From Octopus sinensis (Eukaryota), in the NCBI RefSeq assembly GCF_006345805.1, contig NC_043004.1:39618001-39682000 (forward strand): a stretch of DNA of 64,000 nt. Direction: 5' to 3'. Under the pieces are notes generated by a model. The model did not search any database and was not told the DNA's origin. It worked only from the letters and a program-made list of their open reading frames with translations. Shown in pieces: positions 5,976 to 56,157 of the stretch. A program made the translations under genes and the position numbers. Numbering within the stretch: the stretch's first letter is position 1; every line of letters starts with the position of its first letter.

Positions 5976-6378
5976 TACTCTTTTACTCTTTTACTTGTTT
6001 CAGTCATTTGACTGCGGCCATGCTGGAGCACCGCCTTTAATCGAGCAACTCGACCCCGGGACTTATTCTATTGTAAGCCCAGTACTTATTCTATCGGTCT
6101 CTTATGCCGAACCGCTAAGTAGCGGGGACATAAACACACCAGCATCGGTTGTCAAGCAATGCTAGGGGGATAAACACAGACACACAAACACAGACACGCA
6201 TATATATATACATATATACGACGGGCTTCTTTCAGTTTCCGTCTACCAAATCCAATAACAAGGCTTTGGTCGGCCTGAGGCTATAGTAGAAGACACTTGC
6301 CCAAGGTGCCACGCAGTGGGACTGAACCCGGAACCATGTGGTTGGTAAACAAGTTACTTACCACGCAGCCACTCCTGC
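5976..6378 (-). mobile_element. Full-length family A SINE
   Basis: Head GCAGGAGTGGCTGCGTGGTAAG..GGTTCCGGGTTCAGTCCC (A/B-box-like), internal (CA)/(TA) tract and AAAAGAGT-repeat tail. Confidence 0.9.
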
Positions 6379-11538: not shown

Positions 11539-12754
11539 GTATGGTGCAAAGGTTACGAAAAATAGAACACAAAAACGAAGTAGATGAATACGAGGAAGTA
11601 AAAGAAATCGAAATGTACATGACTTACCTTCAACCATCGTGTGTGTGTGTGTGTGTGTGTGTGTGTTGTGTGTGTGTGTGGTGTGTGCATGGCACATTGG
11701 GCATGTAACTTCTACTCTGGCCCCAGGTCGCTCTATATGTATTATAAGTGAATTTCATGGCGGAAACTGTGAGGAAGCTTTTCATGTGTGTTGTGTGTAT
11801 GTGTATGTGTGTGTGTGTGTTGTGACTTAGCTAAATTATACAAAAAAACGTAGACAACCGAATGTTTTTCTTACTCCACACTCCAGTTGTTCTGTTATGT
11901 CGGTAAGACCACCAGCGCTGCAATATCACGTGATTATTGTCGTATGCCTGTCTTCAACTCTATCAATTTGACAAAGTAAACAATACCAATTTTATTTGTT
12001 ATTAAAGATCACTATTTTTTCAAAAAACACGGATACATTTTCTTATGGTAATAATCACAAACAATATTATTGTTTATCACCGAATCATTCCATATCGTGC
12101 AAGCCTAAGATGTTCTGACGTATTCATTTTGTTTTCCTTCCTTTTATGGAAGAAAATCCCACGGTACTTGGAGAAAAAAAAACATAATATCTCTTACCCC
12201 AGTTGAGGCAGCAAGACAATAAATATTTCGTTTCTGTACGTTATAGGATTCTTGTAGCACCACCGAAAGCTTTGTCTTGATGCAACGACGAATATTGTGA
12301 CCCCCTTCGGTCATGAATGACCACGAGATTGCACCTAGAAAATTACCCTCCGAGGCACAAGTCTGGGTAAGGTTGTTTATGGAGACCAGCAGCCGCCCAT
12401 GCATACCAGCCTCCCCTCCCCATGCCACCGATGTTATCCAAGGGAAAGGCAAAGGAACCGTTACAGCTTTGCACCAGTGACGTCGCAGCTCATTTATTAA
12501 CGTGCAAGTGCCCGAGCATTTCACAGACACGTGTACCCTTAACGTAGTTCTCGGGGAGATTCAGCGTGACACCGCGATCTTACGACTGCGAGTCCGCTGC
12601 GCTAACCACTGGGCCATTGCACCTCCACTGCAATGACGAATAAAACAGAGCAATATAGAGAACATCCATTTTGCTCCTTATTCTCTCAATTCTTGAAATC
12701 ATTTGTAGCTAATAACGTTACTTCTGCATAGTACATGTTATGGTGCTTCTACAT

Positions 12755-13571: not shown

Positions 13572-13833
13572 ACGAGGGAGTGGTGAAAAGTTCCTGGCTT
13601 TGGGTTAAAACAATACTGGAAGATCATTTACTCTTTTACTCTTTTACTTGTTTCAGTCATTTGACTGCGGCCATGCTGGAGCACCGCCTTTAATCGAGCA
13701 ACTCGACCCCCGGGTCTTATTCTTTTGTAAGCCCAGTACTTATTCTATCGGTCTCTTTTCCCGAACCGCTAAGTAACGGGGACATAAACACACCAGCGAT
13801 GTTGGGAGGGGACAAACACAGACACACACACAC

Positions 13834-13880
<47 letters not shown>

Positions 13881-14198
13881 CACACACATATATATACGAT
13901 GGGCTTCTTTCAGTTTTCGTCTACCAAATCCACTCACAAGGCTTTGGTCGGCCCGAGGCTATAGTAGAAGACACTTGCCCAAGGTGCCACGCAGTGGGAC
14001 TGAACCCGGAACCATGTGGTTGGTAAACAAGCTACTTACCACACAGCCACTCCTGAATTTTATTCAACATATTCCACTTCACACACTTATTGCAGCAGGC
14101 CTTCAATTTTTCAAAGCCTTGAAGCAAAAATTCGGAATGTTGGGCCTCCAACCAGACTTTTCTCGATGTCCTTAAAGCCAGGAACTTTTCGGCACCCT
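13572..14198 (-). mobile_element. Mariner-type MITE with a nested family A SINE (13629-14055)
   Basis: TIRs ACGAGGGAGTGGTGAAAAGTTCCTGGCTTT and AAAGCCAGGAACTTTTCGGCACCCT. An uninterrupted relative lies at 37429-37652 and a partial one at ~52207-52345. Confidence 0.75.
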
Positions 14199-19669: not shown

Positions 19670-20050
19670 TATACTCACACACATACAGACACACATATAG
19701 TTACATAAATACTATAGATTTATGCACTCACATCCATATATGTACATATGTATAATACATAGAATATATCAGTATGTATCAATACATGTGTGTGTTTGCA
19801 TGTCAGTATATAGACAGACTTGGAAGGTCGTTGACTCTTTTGCGTTCGTCTGCCCTTTGACAAACTTTGCTTTCCATCATCTCACAGGTTGTCTAAAACC
19901 ACCTTTCTCAGCAAGTATGCTGGATGCAGTTGCCGAAATAGTTGCTAACGGCAAAACTATGCACAAGTTGTACTTGTTGGCATGGTTACCAGAAGCAAGT
20001 TTCAGGTTTTCAGATCTCTGACATGACAGGAATATATGTATGTAGTGTCT

Positions 20051-20089
<39 letters not shown>

Positions 20090-20236
20090 TATGTGTGTGT
20101 GTGTGTGATCCGTGTGCGTGTATGTATGTTAGTGCATAAAAGTACATAATCTCTTCATTTATTTGGGTAATTTAATTACATTTTAATACCAATTTTGTTT
20201 CATTACTGTTTCAATCAATATTGTTTAAAGAAAATT

Positions 20237-20271
20237 CTTAATTTTTCCTTTCTTCTTTATTGCAGGTAAGT
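20237..20271 (+). other. Candidate recursive splice site (zero-length exon, AG|GT)
   Basis: Branch-point-like CTTAAT (20237-20242), 19/20 pyrimidines (20242-20261), then CAG (20263-20265) directly followed by GTAAGT (20266-20271). Confidence 0.6.
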
Positions 20272-20446
20272 GGAATACTCCATTCAGTTTTGGATATAAT
20301 CTACTTTAATTTGGTAAATGCCCGTTGAACGTTTTCCCAAACACATAAAGGTATTTCACTGTATTTTAATACATATATGGACCTCTGTAATTTAAGACAA
20401 ACCCGTGGGTATAAAGAAGCGTCATGTTTTTAATTGTTGAAATATA

Positions 20447-20830
20447 GGCGCAGGAGCAGCTGTGTGGTAAGTAGCTTGCTTACCAACTATATTGTCCCGG
20501 GTTCAGTCCCACTGTGTGGCACATTGGTCAATTACCTACTATAGCCTCAGGCCGACCAAAGCATTGAGAGAGGATTTGGTAGGCAGAAACGGAAAGAAGC
20601 TCGTCATATATATATGTATATGTATGTATGTATATGTTTGTGTGTCTGTGTTTCTCCCCACCAACATCGCTTGATAACCAATCCTAGTGTGTTTGTGTTT
20701 ACGTAACTTAACGATTCGGCAAAAGATACCGATGGAATAAGTACTAGGCTTACAGAGGATACATCCTGGGGTTGATTTGCTCGACTAAAAGGGCGGCGCG
20801 GCAGTCAAATGACTGAAACAAGTAAAATAG
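20447..20830 (+). mobile_element. Full-length family A SINE
   Basis: Head GGCGCAGGAGCAGCTGTGTGGTAAG through tail CAGTCAAATGACTGAAACAAGTAAAA. Confidence 0.85.
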
Positions 20831-21216
20831 TATTTCTTTATGCGCGTTATAATATGAAGGCGCCCGGCTTAGTGATTCGGGTATTTAACTCATCCTCATG
20901 AGTTCGATTTTGTTCATTTGGTGAAATAGGTGCTGGGTTGATGTAATCGTATACAATTCCATGGAAGAAGTCAAATTACTTAAATCAGTAAAACAGGACG
21001 GAATGAAGGATTCATTCAAGCTGGGGTGATGACTATACCTACATATCTTTGATGTATATGCATACACACACAGATATATATTATGCATATATATATATAT
21101 ATTGGTAGCTTTAAAAAATCATATAATTACATTTACTTAACCGGTTTCTAATTTTATGATTTTCATAACAAGTCAGCGATGGATAGACATGGAGTTATAC
21201 CGAGAATGTACGCGTG

Positions 21217-22368: not shown

Positions 22369-22406
<38 letters not shown>

Positions 22407-22411
22407 GCTTA

Positions 22412-22980
22412 TTAACCCTAAACTGCCAAGCCAATGTGATAAAAGATGGAGCTGACTCAAAATGCCGATTCTGTAACAATGAGATTGAAACTATAGACCA
22501 CCTAATCTCAGGGTGTAGAGTCTTAGCACCTGTAGAATATAAAGCAAGACATGACAGAGTTGGCCAGTATTTACACTGGACAATATGTCGGCATTATAAA
22601 ATTAAAACTGCTGACAAATGGTATAAACACCATCCTGAAGCTGTGACTGAGGGAGAAAATGTGTCGATTCTCTGGGTCTTCCCCGTACATACCGACAAAA
22701 CTATAAAAGCTAATAAACCGGATATTATTGTAAAAGATCAGAGAAAAAAGGTGTGTATATTAATTGAAGCGAAAGAATTTGACAAGATTAGTAAATATAA
22801 AGACTTGCTAATACAAACTGAAAAAAATGTGGCATCTCAAGGCGACTACAGTACCAGTGATTGTAGGATCTCTAGGAATGATAAAAAAAAAAAAAGGTAC
22901 TGAAACCTATTTGAAAATGATACCAGGAAGTACAAAAAATCGTGTTAACTGGAACGAGTCATGTACTGGGAAGAGCATTA
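22412..22980 (+). mobile_element. 5'-truncated RLE-type non-LTR retrotransposon (R4/Dong-like) C-terminus
   Basis: KCRFCNNEIETIDHLISGC (CCHC knuckle), RHDRVGQYLHW, KPDIIV..KVCILIE..KISKYKDL (PD-(D/E)xK nuclease) and VPVIVGSLG after a frameshift. It abuts (TAA)n at 22358-22405. Confidence 0.85.
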
Positions 22981-24328: not shown

Positions 24329-26498
24329 TATATATAACGGGAAGCTTTATGAAAATAAACAAAAGACGAAGGCAGGTGGAAAACAAACGAACAATTGTAT
24401 TAGTATGGCGCTCAGGAAATATAAATAAAACAAGTCTTTAACGTTTCGAGCCTACGCTCTTCAACAGAAAGATACACAGAGAGAGAAAAACACAGAAAGA
24501 AGGAGAGAAAAAAAATGCGTATGAATGAATGAAAAAAGTGGTAATATAAGAGAAAATAAAAATACAACAAACGGGACAGTTTATGCGAACAAGTCAAGGT
24601 GTGAAAGTTCAAGGGAGGAAGGTGTAGACGTCGTGGTATATTTTTTAAGGATTTCACATCAATGCAAAGTCACTTTGATCCGCGAAAGAGAGGTGCAGCC
24701 GATGGTAGTATCCAAGAGGTAAAGAAAATCCAAGGTAGAGGTAAGTGTTGATAGTGGTATGGGTAGAATATAGGATGAAAGTGAGACCACGTGAGCGCAT
24801 AATATATAACGGGAAGCTTTATGAAAATAAACAAAAGACGAAGGCAGGTGGAAAACAAACGAACAATGTATTAGTATGGGGCGCTCAGGAAATATAAATA
24901 AAACAAGTCTTTAACGTTTCGAGCCTACGCTCTTCAACAGAAAGATACACAGAGAGAGAAAAACACAGAAAGAAGGAGAGAAAAAAAATGCGTATGAAAT
25001 GAATGTAAAAAAAGTGGTAATATAAGAGAAAATAAAAATACAACAAACGGGACAGTTTATGCGAACAAGTTCAAGGTTGAAAGTTCAAGGTGAGAAATGT
25101 GTAGACGTCGTGGTATATTTTTTAAGGATTTCACATCAATGCAAAGTCACTTTGATCCGCGAAAGAGAGGTGCAGCCGATGGTAAGTATCCAAGAGGTAA
25201 AGAAAATCCAAGGTAGAGGTAAGTGTTGATAGTGGTATTGGTAGAATATAGGATGAAAGTGAGACCACGTGAGCGCATAATATATAACGGGAAGCTTTAT
25301 GAAAATAAACAAAAGACGAAGGCAGGTGGAAAACAAACGAACAATTGTATTAGTATGGCGCTCAGGAAATATAAATAAAACAAGTCTTTAACGTTTCGAG
25401 CCTACGCTCTTCAACAGAAAGATACACAGAGAGAGAAAAACACAGAAAGAAGGAGAGAAAAAAAATGCGTATGAAATGAATGTAAAAAAAGTGGTAATAT
25501 AAGAGAAAATAAAAATACAACAAACGGGACAGTTTATGCGAACAAGTTCAAGGTTGAAAGTTCAAGGTGAGAAATGTGTAGACGTCGTGGTATATTTTTT
25601 AAGGATTCACATCAATGCAAAGTCACTTTGATCCGCGAAAGAGAGGTGCAGCCGATGGTAAGTATCCAAGAGGTAAAAAAATCAAGGTAGAGGTAAGTGT
25701 TGATAGTGGTATTGGTAGAATATAGGATGAAAGTGAGACCACGTGAGCGCATAATATATAACGGGAAGCTTATGAAAATAAACAAAAGACGAAGGCAGGT
25801 GGAAAACAAACGAACAATTGTATTAGTATGGCGCTCAGGAAATATAAATAAAACAAGTCTTTAACGTTTCGAGGCCTACGCTCTTCAACAGAAAGATACA
25901 CAGAGAGAGAAAAACACAGAAAGAAGGAGAGAAAAAAAATGCGTATGAAATGAATGTAAAAAAAGTGGTAATATAGAGAAAATAAAAATACAACAAACGG
26001 GACAGTTTATGCGAACAAGTCAAGGTTGAAAGTTCAAGAGTGAGAAATGTGTAGACGTCGTGGTATATTTTTTAAGGATTTCACATCAATGCAAAGTCAC
26101 TTTGATCCGCGAAAGAGAGGTGCAGCCGATGGTAAGTATCCAAGAGGTAAAGAAAATCCAAGGTAGAGGTAAGTGTTGATAGTGGTATTGGTAGAATATA
26201 GGATAGGATGAAAGTGAGACCACGTGAGCGCATAATATATAACGGGAAGCTTTATGAAAATAAACAAAAGACGAAGGCAGGTGGAAAACAAACGAACAAT
26301 TGTATTAGTATGGCGCTCAGGAAATATAAATAAAACAAGTCTTTAACGTTTCGAGCCTACGCTCTTCAACAGAAAGATACACAGAGAGAGAAAAACACAG
26401 AAAGAAGGAGAGAAAAAAAATGCGTATGAAATGAATGTAAAAAAAGTGGTAATATAAGAGAAAATAAAAATACAACAAACGGGACAGTTTATGCGAAC
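24329..26498 (-). repeat. Tandem array of ~4.6 near-identical ~475-bp monomers, each with a minimal hammerhead-like motif (retrozyme-like)
   Basis: ACGGGAAGC recurs at 24337, 24809, 25287, 25761 and 26242. HHR-like motifs lie at 24435-24472, 24908-24945, 25385-25422, 25858-25896 and 26340-26377. Confidence 0.9.
24435..24472 (-). ncRNA. Minimal type I hammerhead-like motif with variant core (first of five)
   Basis: RNA UCUUU-CUGUUGA-A-GAGC(GUAG)GCUC-GAA-ACGU-U-AAAGA: 5-bp stem I, 4-bp stem II, palindromic ACGU stem III and GUU triplet. Core A6 is replaced by U. Confidence 0.6.
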
Positions 26499-30260: not shown

Positions 30261-31044
30261 TCTGTTGTGGTGGGCGGATCTTCTTTAAACCCCGTATACA
30301 TCAGTCCTTTGTTATCTCCTTTGCAAGGCTCAGCGTTCTCAGATCGGCCTTTAATTCATCGTCATATGTTTTCATTGGTCTCCATCTTCCACAACTTCCC
30401 TCCACTTTGAATGATCGTGCTTTTTTATGCAACTGCTTTCATCAATAAATAAATAAATTAATTAACATATAAATATATTAAAACAATAAAACTTTTTTTC
30501 AACTGAACGTCTTTCACCAGTTGTTAGCTTAATCAAGGTTAACCTGCAGCTGAGGTAGTGAATTCCATTCAGAGACCGAGATGTGTGTAGTTTTCTTAAG
30601 CAAGAGACTTTACTTCATATTCTTGCAGTTCAATCAGCTGTAGAAACGAGTTGGAACATCAGTGGTGCCAAGCTGTATCTACCTTTGCCTTTCCCTTGGT
30701 TAACATCGGTGGCGTGTAGAGGGAAGACTAGTACACATGAGTGGCTACTGGTCTTCCATAAAAATTTTTTTTTAAAAAACCTTGCCCGGACTTTCTAGTA
30801 GAAATTCTATGGTCATTCATGACCGAAGGTGGGTGTCTTTACATATTACTAATGACAATTACACCAGCAACAGCAATAGCAAAAAAAACCAAAAAAAACA
30901 AAAATAATCAATAATCAAATAAATAAAACAATAATTCATACATCTTGCAAAATAGCACCCAATGCAAACCGTATATTAATATATAATAGAATAGATGCAG
31001 GAACTTCGTTGCACAGCTCCAAGTTTCACTTTTCGGTTCGGATA

Positions 31045-51080: not shown

Positions 51081-51444
51081 TTGGGTCTTCTTGGGGAAAA
51101 CAACCTGGATATTGGGAAGGACACCACCCTGGGTGATGGTCACTCCAGACAAAAGTTTTTTCAATTAACCGTCGTTACAGATGACCAACTGCAAATGACG
51201 GGGAATAATTCTTAATTTCTTGTTATCGCTGGCAGCATTTCATGTCAATTCCGAAACTTCGGCAATTAAATATTGTATAAGTGCAACCAAGTAGATTGGG
51301 GTTCCGGCACCAACACGGTTGGCCATAGTTTCCCTCACTTAGAAGACAGTGGATACGAGCGACAGGGAACTGAATTCCAGCACGGGATGAACGACTCTTG
51401 CTCTTCCCCTTCAATTTACCTCCGCCTTTACCACGTCCAGACAT
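51081..51444 (-). pseudogene. H2A: Histone H2A pseudogene
   Basis: [41 protein letters not shown], +1 frameshift, [76 protein letters not shown]. Stops lie at 51240-51242 and 51165-51167. Confidence 0.95.
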
Positions 51445-53769
51445 ACTAGTTTTCAGCAAAATAGCGAAAGCGGCATGAGGTAGAGTCGGGTACAATATAT
51501 AACATACCTAGCAAAGATCTAGGGACACGCGCGTTAAGATCATCCTTAGATATTACATTACAGCTGTCAATAATGTTTTAATTGAGGGTAATTTGACAGC
51601 TACGTGTAACTTTTTTGAGATACCTGTTTCTTTACTATCCACAAGGGGCTAAACACAGAGAGGACAAACAAGGACAGACAAACGGATTAAGTCGATTATA
51701 TCGACCCTAGTGCGTAACTGGTACTTATTTAATCGACCCCGAAAGGATGAAAGTCGACCTCGGCGGAATTTGAACTCAGAACGAAACGGCAGACGAAATA
51801 CCGCTAAGCATTTCGCCCGGCGTGCTAACGTTTCTGCCAGGGCGATTCCCTGTTGAATGGGAAAAATGTGAACTAGGGTTGAATTGGCTACTATTTCTGT
51901 CGGCCGTAATTGCAATGTTGATGTCTAACTGTTTTATTGATTTCACTGTTGTTGTTATTGTTGATGTCAGTCTCGACAAAGCAACCTTCCAGCTTCGATC
52001 TTCCGATTTTTGTTTTATATTTTATATTGGTGTCTAATGTAGCCCTCAACACCTTTTCTCTGGATTTCTCGAAAAGGGGTCTGAAATGCCAGGTAATAGT
52101 ACTAACCATCAGCCTGTACAATTAATCTTTTTATAACGGGCATTGGTTTGGCTTTTAAAAATATCTAAAACACACACACACATACACATACACTCATATA
52201 CACACACACACATACACACACGCGCACACATTCTCGAGGAGAGGCTGTAAAGTTCTTAGCTGGCTGGAGGCCCAACCTTCCAAGTTCTTTAACAGGCTTA
52301 GAAACACTGAAGGACCGCTGCAGTAAGTGAGTGAATCTGAGAGAGAAATATCTATTATATAAAATCCGTTCTGTCTGTCTGTGTGTGTGTCTTCTAGGAT
52401 CTCGGGCATCCTCCATCCGATTGCGCTCAAATTTGGTATGTAGAAACCAACGGTATCAGGGCATGTATAAGTCTTGAAAAAATTACAAAAATCCATTCCA
52501 GGTGAGAATGCGATCGATAAAGCCGTGGGAACGTGCATTTCTACGTGCAAGTACATCAGCTGTTGCGATCGATACTACGCATACGCGAGAAAAATGCACG
52601 TGCAGTTTGCACAAAAGAAGCCGGCTGGCTTGAAATAATGCCACAAAATGGGACGGTCGGACAAGTTGTTTTGAGAAAATTTGGTTTAAATGTTTAACAA
52701 CTCAGCACCGTCCATTGGACGGGGGGCGTTTTGCTTGTGTTGATTAAGATCGTAGTTAACTGATTTTCCTATATTTTCTTTTACCCAAGGTCAGGAACTG
52801 TTCAGCACCCCCCCCCCACGTATGATATATACAAATATTGTGAAGAACATGCCTAGTTCTTGAAAACATCACCTTTATAGTTGTTTAACCTGTAATCAAT
52901 ACATTTTCTAAAGTTGTCTTTTGTATATCTATTTTTCTACTCACCCAACACTGTATTAGTACAAATGATACGTATGAATGCATATATTTATTTAATGCGC
53001 GTATATCTGAACGTATATTTGTGAGTACATGTCCATATTTTTAACTAAGTATTTTTGCATATACTTGTAAGTACTTATACATTTTCGTTGAGTGTGTAGT
53101 TTGGATGGATTTATGCATGCATGAATGTATGTAATTGTGTATATATAAACGTATATTTTAAATGTAGGCAGCTATACGTGCAACAGTATAAATCTTTCCC
53201 CATTGCGTGTGTGTGTGTGTGTGCGTGTGTGTGTGTGTGTGTGTGTGCATGTATTTGTGATCTATACGTATTTACTACACTGTGATCAGGACTTTACTAC
53301 CATTTATTTCGTTATTTTTATCTGTTTTTATACGAAAATCTTCCCGGAAAGATCCACTATGAAAAATGGACGCATAGAGCTCATTTGATTCAGCCTCAAT
53401 CTTTACATATGGTTGCAGGACTGCTATGTTAGGTTTTCTTGAAAAGAAACGGACAATTTCATACGACTATGTTCATGCGTGTATGCAGGGGATTTTTTCT
53501 TTTTTTTTTATGAACAGGTGGATTAAGATTTCTACAAACCAATAATCATTCGTTTGTTAAGCTTTGGAGTGTCCATTAGCATACTCAATACATATAAGAC
53601 ACGACAACCAAGCTGTACGCTGCACTCAGAGGTCACATTTACAGTCGTAAGTGACGTGAAAATGGCTCAATTCCCGCCTACACAACGCGAACATACGCAC
53701 GCACACTCTAGACAAATGCATACACATACAAACATACACACATATATACACACGCAGGCAGAAACACAC

Positions 53770-54834: not shown

Positions 54835-55129
54835 ATGGCTGCCCCCTCGTTATCGAGTATGGCCATTGCACGAAGCTTAACTGTTACTAGTGTTGTGATC
54901 GAATGTGACTTTTTAGCCCAGCGAAATATCTACAATGTCTTGTACAGAGTTGGCAACTGAAACCTTTACCGGTAATAGCCGGCTGTAGTTGTAACTGGGC
55001 TTCAAGTGCATTTGCATGTCGTTTAAGTCCTCCTGTCGAATTACACTCTCTTCCACATGCCCGACAGATATGATTAGTATGGTGTGTTACACCACCACCA
55101 GTGGCCAGGTTGTCACTCATCTATCTCGC
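54835..55129 (-). mobile_element. ~295-bp cassette encoding two C2H2-like zinc fingers, copy 1 (probably an RTE-type 3' end)
   Basis: HICRACGRECNSTGGLKRHANAL..FSCQLCTRHCRYFAGLKSHIRSQH followed by an (ATGT)n tail. Confidence 0.65.
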
Positions 55130-55866: not shown

Positions 55867-56157
55867 ATGGCTGCCCCCTCGTTATCGAGTATTGCCATTA
55901 CGCGAAGCTTAACTGCTACTGGTGCTGTGATCGAATGTGACTTTTTAGCCCAGCTAAAGATCTACAATGTCTTGTACAGAATTGGCAACTAAAACCTTTA
56001 CCGGTAATAGCCGGCTGTAGTTGTAACTGGGCTTCATGTACCTTTGCATGTCGTTTAAGTCCTCCTGTCGAATTACACTCTCTTCCACATGCCCGACAGA
56101 TATGATTAGTATGGTGTGTTCACCACCAGTGGCCAGGTTGTCACTCATCTGTCTCGC
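55867..56157 (-). mobile_element. Two-C2H2 cassette, copy 2
   Basis: HICRACGRECNSTGGLKRHAKVH..FSCQFCTRHCRSLAGLKSHIRSQHQ*; same end points as copy 1. Confidence 0.65.

What the first reader, a model, noticed from the sequence alone, without database searches (positions are those of the whole stretch)
20237..20271. Consensus recursive splice site (ratchet point), suggesting stepwise splicing of a giant intron
Seen: branch-like CTTAAT with its A 24 nt upstream of the junction, a 20-nt pyrimidine tract, and CAG immediately followed by a perfect GTAAGT donor, in unique sequence. I noticed no other site this strong in the window. Known: YAG|GTAAGT zero-length exons define recursive splicing in very long Drosophila and vertebrate introns, often in neural genes. 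I am not aware of this being characterised in cephalopods (unverified). Inference: the window is intronic to a + strand gene.
Basis: partly seen in the sequence, partly recalled or inferred. Interest (0 to 1): 0.8.

Follow-up and report, generated by a model that had tools for sequence, protein, structure and literature searches.

The report
Unproven candidate recursive splice site
A textbook back-to-back splice acceptor and donor motif really is present at 20263-20271 in exon-free, repeat-rich octopus DNA, but nothing I could reach shows that it lies in a transcribed intron, so it is an untested candidate and not a discovery.

Summary
The motif is there as described. CTTAAT is at 20237-20242. 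A pyrimidine tract runs 20242-20262, with 19 of 21 pyrimidines and a 17-nt pure run. CAG|GTAAGT is at 20263-20271.

The 9-mer core alone is not above chance: 1 found, 1.28 expected. The composite is unusual. It is the best donor of 8,133 GT sites and a top-3 acceptor of 6,714 AG sites, both at one junction. Estimated chance is about 0.003-0.008 per 64-kb window, which implies roughly 100-300 equally good sites by chance in a 2.5-Gb genome.

The site also meets the sequence rules of fly ratchet points: TT at -5/-6, a branch A inside -36..-21, and a weaker donor 48 nt downstream.

Every contextual criterion stayed untestable. I found no coding exon in the 64 kb, no RNA gene and no strand asymmetry. 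No orthologous sequence, annotation or RNA data was reachable.

SINE copies match Octopus sinensis at 80-90%, so the DNA is octopod.

My split:
- about 0.5: inert or only latent chance motif
- about 0.38: a working recursive splice site
- about 0.08: edge of an ordinary unannotated exon

If it is real, it extends a known mechanism to a new phylum. It would not be a new mechanism.

The parts
20237..20242 (+). Candidate branch-point motif CTTAAT, with the branch A at 20241 (position -25 if the last intron base G at 20265 is -1).
   Evidence: Read directly. It lies inside the -36..-21 range of mapped fly ratchet-point branch points. It is weakly discriminating: 24% of all AG sites in the window have a YTNAY motif, and 10% a YTRAY motif, with the A in that range.
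20242..20262 (+). Polypyrimidine tract: 19 of 21 pyrimidines, a 17-nt uninterrupted run at 20242-20258, and TT at -6/-5 (20260-20261). The stretch 20231-20263 contains no AG.
   Evidence: Only 6 of 3,112 YAG sites on both strands have 19 or more of 21 pyrimidines upstream. TT at -5/-6 occurs at 8.4% of AG sites here, against 99.5% of fly ratchet points.
20263..20265 (+). CAG, the 3' splice-site (acceptor) half of the junction.
   Evidence: Acceptor score 11.0 bits, rank 2 of 3,380 AG on the + strand.
20266..20271 (+). GTAAGT, the 5' splice-site (donor) half. CAG|GTAAGT is fully complementary to the 5' end of U1 snRNA (established knowledge).
   Evidence: Donor score 12.8 bits, the best of all 8,133 GT sites on both strands.
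20266..20313 (+). Possible 48-nt cryptic RS-exon, closed by a weaker donor TTG|GTAAAT at 20314 (4.4 bits). Alternatives are 85 nt to AAG|GTATTT at 20351 (5.3 bits), or 201 nt to TGG|GTAAGT at 20467 (9.8 bits), which lies in the SINE head.
   Evidence: The size and the weaker downstream donor fit the fly model of a cryptic exon of about 50 nt. Moderate GT sites are common, so this is consistent but not discriminating. There are stop codons in two of the three frames (read).
20137..20441 (.). A 305-bp patch with no other copy in the window. It carries the site.
   Evidence: Self-BLAST. No terminal inverted repeats and no unusual RNA fold.
20442..20832 (+). Flanking tRNA-type SINE copy in + orientation, which supplies the downstream GTAAGT at 20467. 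The upstream flank is the (GT)n microsatellite at 20045-20107.
   Evidence: The same SINE family in Octopus sinensis contig VCDQ01003308.1 is 80-90% identical to window copies.

Best explanation
Most likely, by a narrow margin, this is a fortuitous back-to-back splice acceptor and donor in non-coding, repeat-rich octopod DNA, and it has no selected role. AT-rich DNA with many pyrimidine runs throws up such a composite roughly once per 8-25 Mb. It would be inert if the + strand is not part of a pre-mRNA, that is, if the site is intergenic or antisense to a gene. If it does sit in a sense-strand intron it would behave as a latent cryptic site and not as a conserved ratchet point. Shown: the motif and its rarity. 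Inferred: the lack of function, from base rates and from the absence of any sign of a host gene.
For: - The core 9-mer is at chance level.
- Composite chance is 0.003-0.008 per 64-kb window. That means about 100-300 equally good sites by chance in a genome of about 2.5 Gb, so a scan of many windows will meet some.
- No exon was found in 64 kb. There is no RNA gene, no strand skew and no TE orientation bias, so nothing says the + strand is transcribed.
- Three AG|GT sites score 18 bits or more, against 0.28 expected, and one of them is on the opposite strand. This suggests my nulls understate the tail in real DNA.
- In large genomes, defined recursive sites are rare. Only 20 were found in mouse cortex from 1.15 billion reads. 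Lungfish (40 Gb) shows human-like low levels.
Against: - The best donor and a top-3 acceptor of the whole window coincide at one nucleotide. This was reached in only 0-0.8% of simulated windows.
- The site also meets extra fly ratchet-point rules that I did not use in the score. It has TT at -5/-6 (8.4% background; 99.5% of ratchet points). It has a branch-type motif in the right range (10-24% background). It has a weaker donor about 50 nt downstream.
- About 46 kb of other cephalopod-type DNA fetched here has nothing above 16.1 bits.
Confidence: 0.5

Rival explanations
1. It is a working recursive splice site (ratchet point) in an intron longer than 64 kb of a + strand gene.

Mechanism, inferred from the fly and vertebrate models:
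1. U2AF and U2 recognise the tract and the branch A at 20241.
2. The site is defined as a short cryptic exon with the help of a downstream donor (20314, 20351 or 20467).
3. The upstream exon is ligated to 20266.
4. This recreates a perfect CAG|GTAAGT donor, which outcompetes the weaker downstream donor.
5. The rest of the intron is then removed and no trace is left in the mRNA.
For: - All sequence-level criteria are met: a juxtaposed strong 3' and 5' splice site, TT at -5/-6 and a prominent tract, a branch motif within -36..-21, and a cryptic exon of about 50 nt with a weaker donor.
- Rarity under the null models.
- 64 kb without a recognisable exon is compatible with a giant intron.
- Mouse recursive sites are also enriched for AGGTAAGT and pyrimidines.
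- ATTAAA is rarer on the + strand (29 against 52) and GGTRAG is commoner (27 against 18). This leans weakly towards + strand transcription, but the count is confounded by repeats.
Against: - There is no evidence of a host gene or of its strand.
- Conservation could not be tested: unique ORFs around the site hit nothing.
- No RNA data were available.
- If fly-like spacing (mean segment 18 kb) applied to a 64-kb intron piece, more than one strong site would be expected on the + strand. The next + strand site (53516) has a poor donor and lacks TT at -5/-6.
- Defined recursive sites are rare in other large genomes.
Confidence: 0.38
2. It is one edge of an ordinary but unrecognised exon. One form is the donor of a non-coding or UTR exon ending at 20265, for example from the good acceptor at 19886, giving exon 19888-20265. 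The other is the acceptor of a cassette or poison exon that starts at 20266 and happens to begin with GTAAGT.
For: - CAG|GTAAGT is simply the optimal donor.
- An acceptor ranked 7th on the + strand lies 380 nt upstream at 19886.
- Downstream donors exist at 48, 85 and 201 nt.
Against: - No frame stays open across 19888-20265 or 20266-20350, so neither can be a coding exon.
- The putative upstream exon would contain a 63-bp (GT)n microsatellite and end in a 21-nt pyrimidine tract.
- Nothing in the protein collection matches neighbouring ORFs.
Confidence: 0.08

Closest known systems
Drosophila intronic ratchet points (zero-nucleotide exons; Ubx, kuz, Bx, luna and others)
   Same: Juxtaposed strong acceptor and donor around AG|GT. 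A prominent pyrimidine tract with TT at -5/-6. A branch point within -36..-21. A short cryptic exon of about 50 nt closed by a weaker donor. Occurrence in very long stretches without exons.
   Different: Fly sites are defined by junction reads, saw-tooth coverage, lariats and strong conservation, and they lie in known introns of 11 kb or more. None of this is known for the site here. The taxon is a mollusc with a genome of gigabase scale, about 44% of this window is repeated within itself, and no host gene is known.
Vertebrate recursive splice sites and RS-exons in long neural genes
   Same: AGGTAAGT with a pyrimidine-rich upstream 20 nt. Exon-definition logic with a downstream donor. Association with very long introns in large genomes.
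   Different: Vertebrate sites sit in introns over 51 kb of genes over 294 kb, mostly in the first two introns. They are highly conserved and very few: 20 in mouse cortex. Here the position in a gene and the conservation are unknown.
Motif-predicted recursive site in the 230-kb intron 2 of locust NPF1
   Same: An invertebrate with an expanded genome. The site was predicted from the fly position matrix: branch point, pyrimidine tract and AG|GT.
   Different: The locust site lies in a known intron of a known gene and has some experimental support from U2AF65 immunoprecipitation. The octopod site has neither.
Cryptic splice sites and pseudoexon boundaries in long introns or non-genic DNA
   Same: Splice-consensus matches that arise by chance in long AT-rich non-coding DNA. 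They may be silent or used only sporadically.
   Different: Typical cryptic sites are not simultaneously the best acceptor-class and the best donor-class match in 64 kb.

Membership tests
Recursive splice site / ratchet point | [quoted passage not shown] | tested here: met
   ttgCAG|GTAAGT at 20260-20271. Donor rank 1 of 8,133 and acceptor rank 3 of 6,714 on both strands.
Recursive splice site / ratchet point | Prominent pyrimidine tract with TT at -5/-6 (99.5% of fly ratchet points) | tested here: met
   19 of 21 pyrimidines, with T at 20260 and 20261.
Recursive splice site / ratchet point | Branch point A about 21-36 nt upstream of the acceptor | tested here: inconclusive
   CTTAAT with its A at -25 is present, but 10-24% of all AG sites have such a motif. 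Actual use would need lariat reads.
Recursive splice site / ratchet point | Short cryptic RS-exon closed by a donor weaker than the regenerated one | tested here: inconclusive
   Donors at +48 nt (4.4 bits) and +85 nt (5.3 bits) are weaker than the 12.8-bit regenerated donor. Such donors are common by chance.
Recursive splice site / ratchet point | Lies in a long intron (11 kb or more in fly, over 51 kb in mouse) on the sense strand of a transcribed gene | not testable with these tools
   No exon, RNA gene or strand signal in 64 kb. No annotated cephalopod genome can be searched by DNA here.
Recursive splice site / ratchet point | The motif is conserved across species far more than its flanks | not testable with these tools
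   ORFs flanking the site found no related contigs. The only octopod DNA reached is non-orthologous.
Recursive splice site / ratchet point | Upstream-exon-to-site junction reads, saw-tooth coverage and recursive lariats | not testable with these tools
   No RNA-seq access.
Conventional internal coding exon boundary | An open reading frame adjoining the junction, with similarity to known proteins | tested here: not met
   Stops in all frames within about 60-130 nt on either side of the junction. No protein hits.

The most novel reading that the evidence does not exclude
The site is a genuine, constitutively used ratchet point in an intron longer than 64 kb of an octopus gene, and it follows the fly grammar down to TT at -5/-6 and a cryptic exon of about 50 nt. 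That would be the first recursive splice site documented in a mollusc or any lophotrochozoan. It would argue that the ratchet-point code is ancestral to bilaterians and was reused as cephalopod introns expanded with transposons.
Probability: 0.33. Interest if true: 0.45.

Novelty: new member of a known kind. Interest (0 to 1): 0.25.

Why it matters
If it is real, it extends recursive splicing to a third major animal lineage. It would also give a concrete site for asking how cephalopods, with transposon-swollen introns and long neural genes, keep splicing accurate.

The held literature has nothing on this for octopus or molluscs. Work on lungfish and mouse suggests that large genomes do not rely heavily on defined recursive sites. 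A fly-like usage in octopus would therefore be informative.

A single motif cannot carry that claim. The mechanism is already known in flies and vertebrates, so even a positive result would be an expected extension.

Tried and rejected
1. Core-motif significance was rejected: YAGGTAAGT occurs once against 1.28 expected.
2. Looking for a host gene found none.
   - ORF lists and stop-to-stop scans on six frames showed only transposon fragments, low-complexity ORFs and a histone pseudogene.
   - Pairing acceptors, open frames and donors gave 16 candidates, all SINE-like or low-complexity.
   - 62 relaxed exon-like pieces from unique sequence had no hit.
3. Orthologous sequence for a conservation test was not found. 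An exact look-up of the ORF 250 bp upstream is not on record. Nine unique ORFs within about 2.3 kb of the site had no hit.
4. Strand-of-transcription proxies gave nothing decisive.
   - Rfam and tRNA scans were empty.
   - SINE orientation is 8 minus to 6 plus.
   - GC and TA skew in unique DNA is zero within error.
   - Poly(A)-signal counts are mixed: AATAAA 85 on + against 76 on -, and ATTAAA 29 against 52.
5. The idea of a transposon or MITE carrying the motif has no support. There are no terminal inverted repeats and no second copy in the window. Copies elsewhere in the genome cannot be excluded.
6. An RNA structure around the site was rejected (z = -0.57).
7. A sense-versus-antisense enrichment test on octopus introns was considered and dropped. 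The look-ups left would yield under 1 Mb of genic DNA, far too little for an event expected once per 8-25 Mb by chance.
8. One literature search was badly framed and gave nothing useful. Burnette et al. 2005 is not held.

Full report
WHAT IS THERE
On the + strand the window reads ...aaaattCTTAATttttcctttcttctttattgCAG|GTAAGTggaatac....
- CTTAAT is at 20237-20242, with its second A at 20241.
- The pyrimidine tract is at 20242-20262.
- CAG is at 20263-20265 and GTAAGT at 20266-20271.

The tract is a 17-nt uninterrupted pyrimidine run followed by ATTG, which gives 19 pyrimidines of 21. The stretch 20231-20263 contains no AG.

IS IT MORE THAN CHANCE?
The 9-mer core YAGGTAAGT is not. It occurs once on both strands, against 1.28 expected from dinucleotide-preserving shuffles, and 73 of 100 shuffles have at least one.

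The composite is unusual. I scored every AG as an acceptor and every GT as a donor. The position matrices were written from general knowledge of metazoan splice sites, so they are approximate and are not trained on cephalopods.
- The donor at 20266 is the best of 8,133 GT sites on both strands.
- The acceptor at 20264 is 2nd of 3,380 on the + strand and 3rd of 6,714 overall.
- Among the 315 AG|GT sites the combined score is 23.8 bits, against 18.1 and 18.0 for the runners-up.
- Only 6 of 3,112 YAG sites have 19 or more of 21 pyrimidines upstream.

A score of 23.8 bits or more was reached in 0 of 600 windows simulated with an order-1 Markov model and in 5 of 600 with an order-4 model. Re-pairing real upstream contexts with real downstream contexts gives 0.0026 expected per window.

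The per-window chance is therefore roughly 0.003-0.008. Scaled to a genome of about 2.5 Gb (my assumption for an octopus), that is on the order of 100-300 equally good sites with no function.

One caution applies. Three sites score 18 bits or more where the re-pairing null expects 0.28, and one of them is on the opposite strand. The nulls may therefore understate the tail.

FURTHER SEQUENCE RULES
Published fly ratchet points have these properties:
- TT at -5/-6 in 99.5% of cases
- mapped branch points mostly at -36 to -21
- host introns of 11 kb or more
- a cryptic exon of about 50 nt, closed by a donor weaker than the regenerated one

Here -5 and -6 are both T (20261 and 20260). The CTTAAT branch A is at -25. 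Weaker donors follow at +48 nt (TTG|GTAAAT, 4.4 bits) and +85 nt (AAG|GTATTT, 5.3 bits). A strong donor lies at +201 nt inside the neighbouring SINE (9.8 bits).

Background rates among all 6,705 AG sites scored in the window are 8.4% for TT at -5/-6, 24% for YTNAY and 10% for YTRAY with the A in the right range. These features therefore add modest weight, and the downstream donors add almost none.

SURROUNDINGS
The site sits in a 305-bp patch (20137-20441) that has no other copy in the window. The patch lies between a (GT)n microsatellite (20045-20107) and a + oriented tRNA-type SINE (20442-20832). There are no terminal inverted repeats and no notable RNA fold. All three reading frames close within about 60-130 nt on either side of the junction, so it is not the edge of a coding exon.

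About 44% of the window is repeated within itself, and it is full of microsatellites. Recognisable protein-like pieces are all transposon remnants or a pseudogene:
- a LINE reverse-transcriptase tail at 22406-22900
- mariner-like fragments near 4.4-4.7 kb and 15.4-15.7 kb, identified by eye; Pfam gave no hit for them
- two C2H2 zinc-finger ORFs near 55-56 kb
- a decayed histone H2A fragment at 51226-51507 on the minus strand

TAXON
The LINE fragment's best relatives are ORFs on long ENA contigs, at 56-65% identity, and one Octopus sinensis model at 59%. A 20-kb stretch of O. sinensis contig VCDQ01003308.1 carries a copy of the window's SINE family. That copy is 80-90% identical to window copies, which is as close as the window copies are to each other.

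IS THE WINDOW AN INTRON OF A + STRAND GENE?
I could not find out.
- No coding exon is recognisable.
- Pairing good acceptors, open frames and good donors gave 16 candidates, all SINE-like or low-complexity.
- A relaxed set of 62 exon-like pieces from unique sequence hit nothing among 5.8 billion proteins, which include O. sinensis gene models.
- Rfam and tRNA scans, which could have revealed an intronic snoRNA or miRNA and hence the host strand, were empty.
- SINE orientation is balanced.
- GC and TA skews in unique sequence are 0.002 ± 0.009 and 0.006 ± 0.007.
- Poly(A)-signal and donor-like hexamer counts lean slightly towards + strand transcription, but they are small and confounded by repeats: ATTAAA 29 on + against 52 on -, and GGTRAG 27 against 18.

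Sixty-four kb without an exon fits a giant intron or an intergenic desert equally well.

CONSERVATION
The ORF 250 bp upstream is not on record. Nine unique ORFs within about 2.3 kb of the site found no relatives, so no orthologous contig could be fetched.

WEIGHING
What matters is the ratio of real to chance sites of this quality in an octopus genome.

If octopus were fly-like, real sites would outnumber chance ones. Flies have hundreds of strongly conserved ratchet points, in 6% of long introns.

If octopus were mammal- or lungfish-like, chance sites would dominate. Mouse cortex yielded 20 sites from 1.15 billion reads. Lungfish introns are far longer, yet usage there is only at human-like levels.

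A chance-born site that happens to lie in a sense-strand intron would probably still be used to some degree. However, only about a fifth of random sites do so; in mouse, 23% of AGGT sites lie in gene-sense regions.

Putting more weight on the large-genome pattern, and crediting the extra fly-type features, my estimates are:
- about 0.5: the motif is inert or merely latent
- about 0.38: it works as a recursive splice site
- about 0.08: it is the edge of an ordinary unannotated non-coding exon, for example 19888-20265 from the acceptor at 19886
- the small remainder: unassigned

These numbers are judgement, not computation.

COMPARISON WITH KNOWN SYSTEMS
In sequence this is indistinguishable from a Drosophila ratchet point, and it is compatible with vertebrate recursive sites. 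It cannot be filed as a member, because the defining functional and contextual criteria were not testable. Those criteria are a sense-strand long intron, junction, saw-tooth and lariat evidence, and conservation. The nearest precedent for a motif-only call in a large invertebrate genome is the locust NPF1 intron. There the host intron was known and some binding data were obtained.

NOVELTY AND VERDICT
No held paper links recursive splicing with octopus, and the few papers mentioning it alongside cephalopods or molluscs are unrelated. If real, this would be a new member of a known kind in a new phylum, which is an expected extension. Interest is low to moderate. The decisive checks are quick for anyone with the genome annotation and total RNA-seq.

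Noticed in passing
window 51226-51507 (- strand): A decayed histone H2A fragment. The ORF matches residues 1-55 of H2A in solved structures (E = 4e-15), then diverges and is not continued in frame. It is probably a pseudogene.
   Followed up: partly
window 24330-26498: A 477-bp tandem repeat, 4.6 copies at 97% identity, on a strongly purine-rich strand (GC skew about +0.33, AT skew about +0.26 over 22-26 kb). Each unit carries GAG|GTAAGT without a pyrimidine tract, which accounts for 4 of the 5 AGGTAAGT matches on the + strand.
   Followed up: partly
window 22406-22900 (+ strand): The C-terminal piece of a LINE reverse transcriptase (weak zf-RVT match). Relatives at 56-65% identity lie next to RVT_1 ORFs on very long contigs of two ENA 'metagenome' assemblies (ERZ25067903, ERZ25878469). 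Those contigs look like eukaryotic host DNA with prokaryote-style gene calls.
   Followed up: partly
window, 14 loci, e.g. 5984-6378, 13637-14055, 20442-20832; L004 4686-5062: A tRNA-type SINE family, 8 copies on the minus strand and 6 on the plus strand. Its head contains TGG|GTAAGT, a strong donor-like motif that is thereby scattered through the window. An Octopus sinensis contig has a copy 80-90% identical.
   Followed up: partly
window 54890-55120 and 55919-56119 (- strand): Two near-duplicate ORFs about 1 kb apart, each with C2H2 zinc-finger motifs (weak Pfam matches). It is not resolved whether they are transposon-derived or a decayed zinc-finger gene pair.
   Followed up: no
window 53516 (+ strand) and 27471 (- strand): Second-tier AG|GT sites with strong pyrimidine tracts but poor donors (cag|GTGGAT and ccag|GTCAGC, about 18 bits each), both in unique sequence. 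Together with the main site that makes three sites of 18 bits or more, against 0.28 expected under my re-pairing null.
   Followed up: partly
whole window: The poly(A)-signal variant ATTAAA is about half as frequent on the + strand (29) as on the - strand (52). AATAAA is balanced (85 against 76), and base skews in unique sequence are nil. This is unexplained and could be a repeat artefact.
   Followed up: no
window 12147-12560 (- strand) and 30562-30911 (+ strand): ORFs with shared peptide motifs (…LPLPFPW[IL]TSVA… and …SWSFMTEGG…) occur in opposite orientations about 18 kb apart, with no Pfam match. This is probably an uncharacterised repeat family.
   Followed up: no
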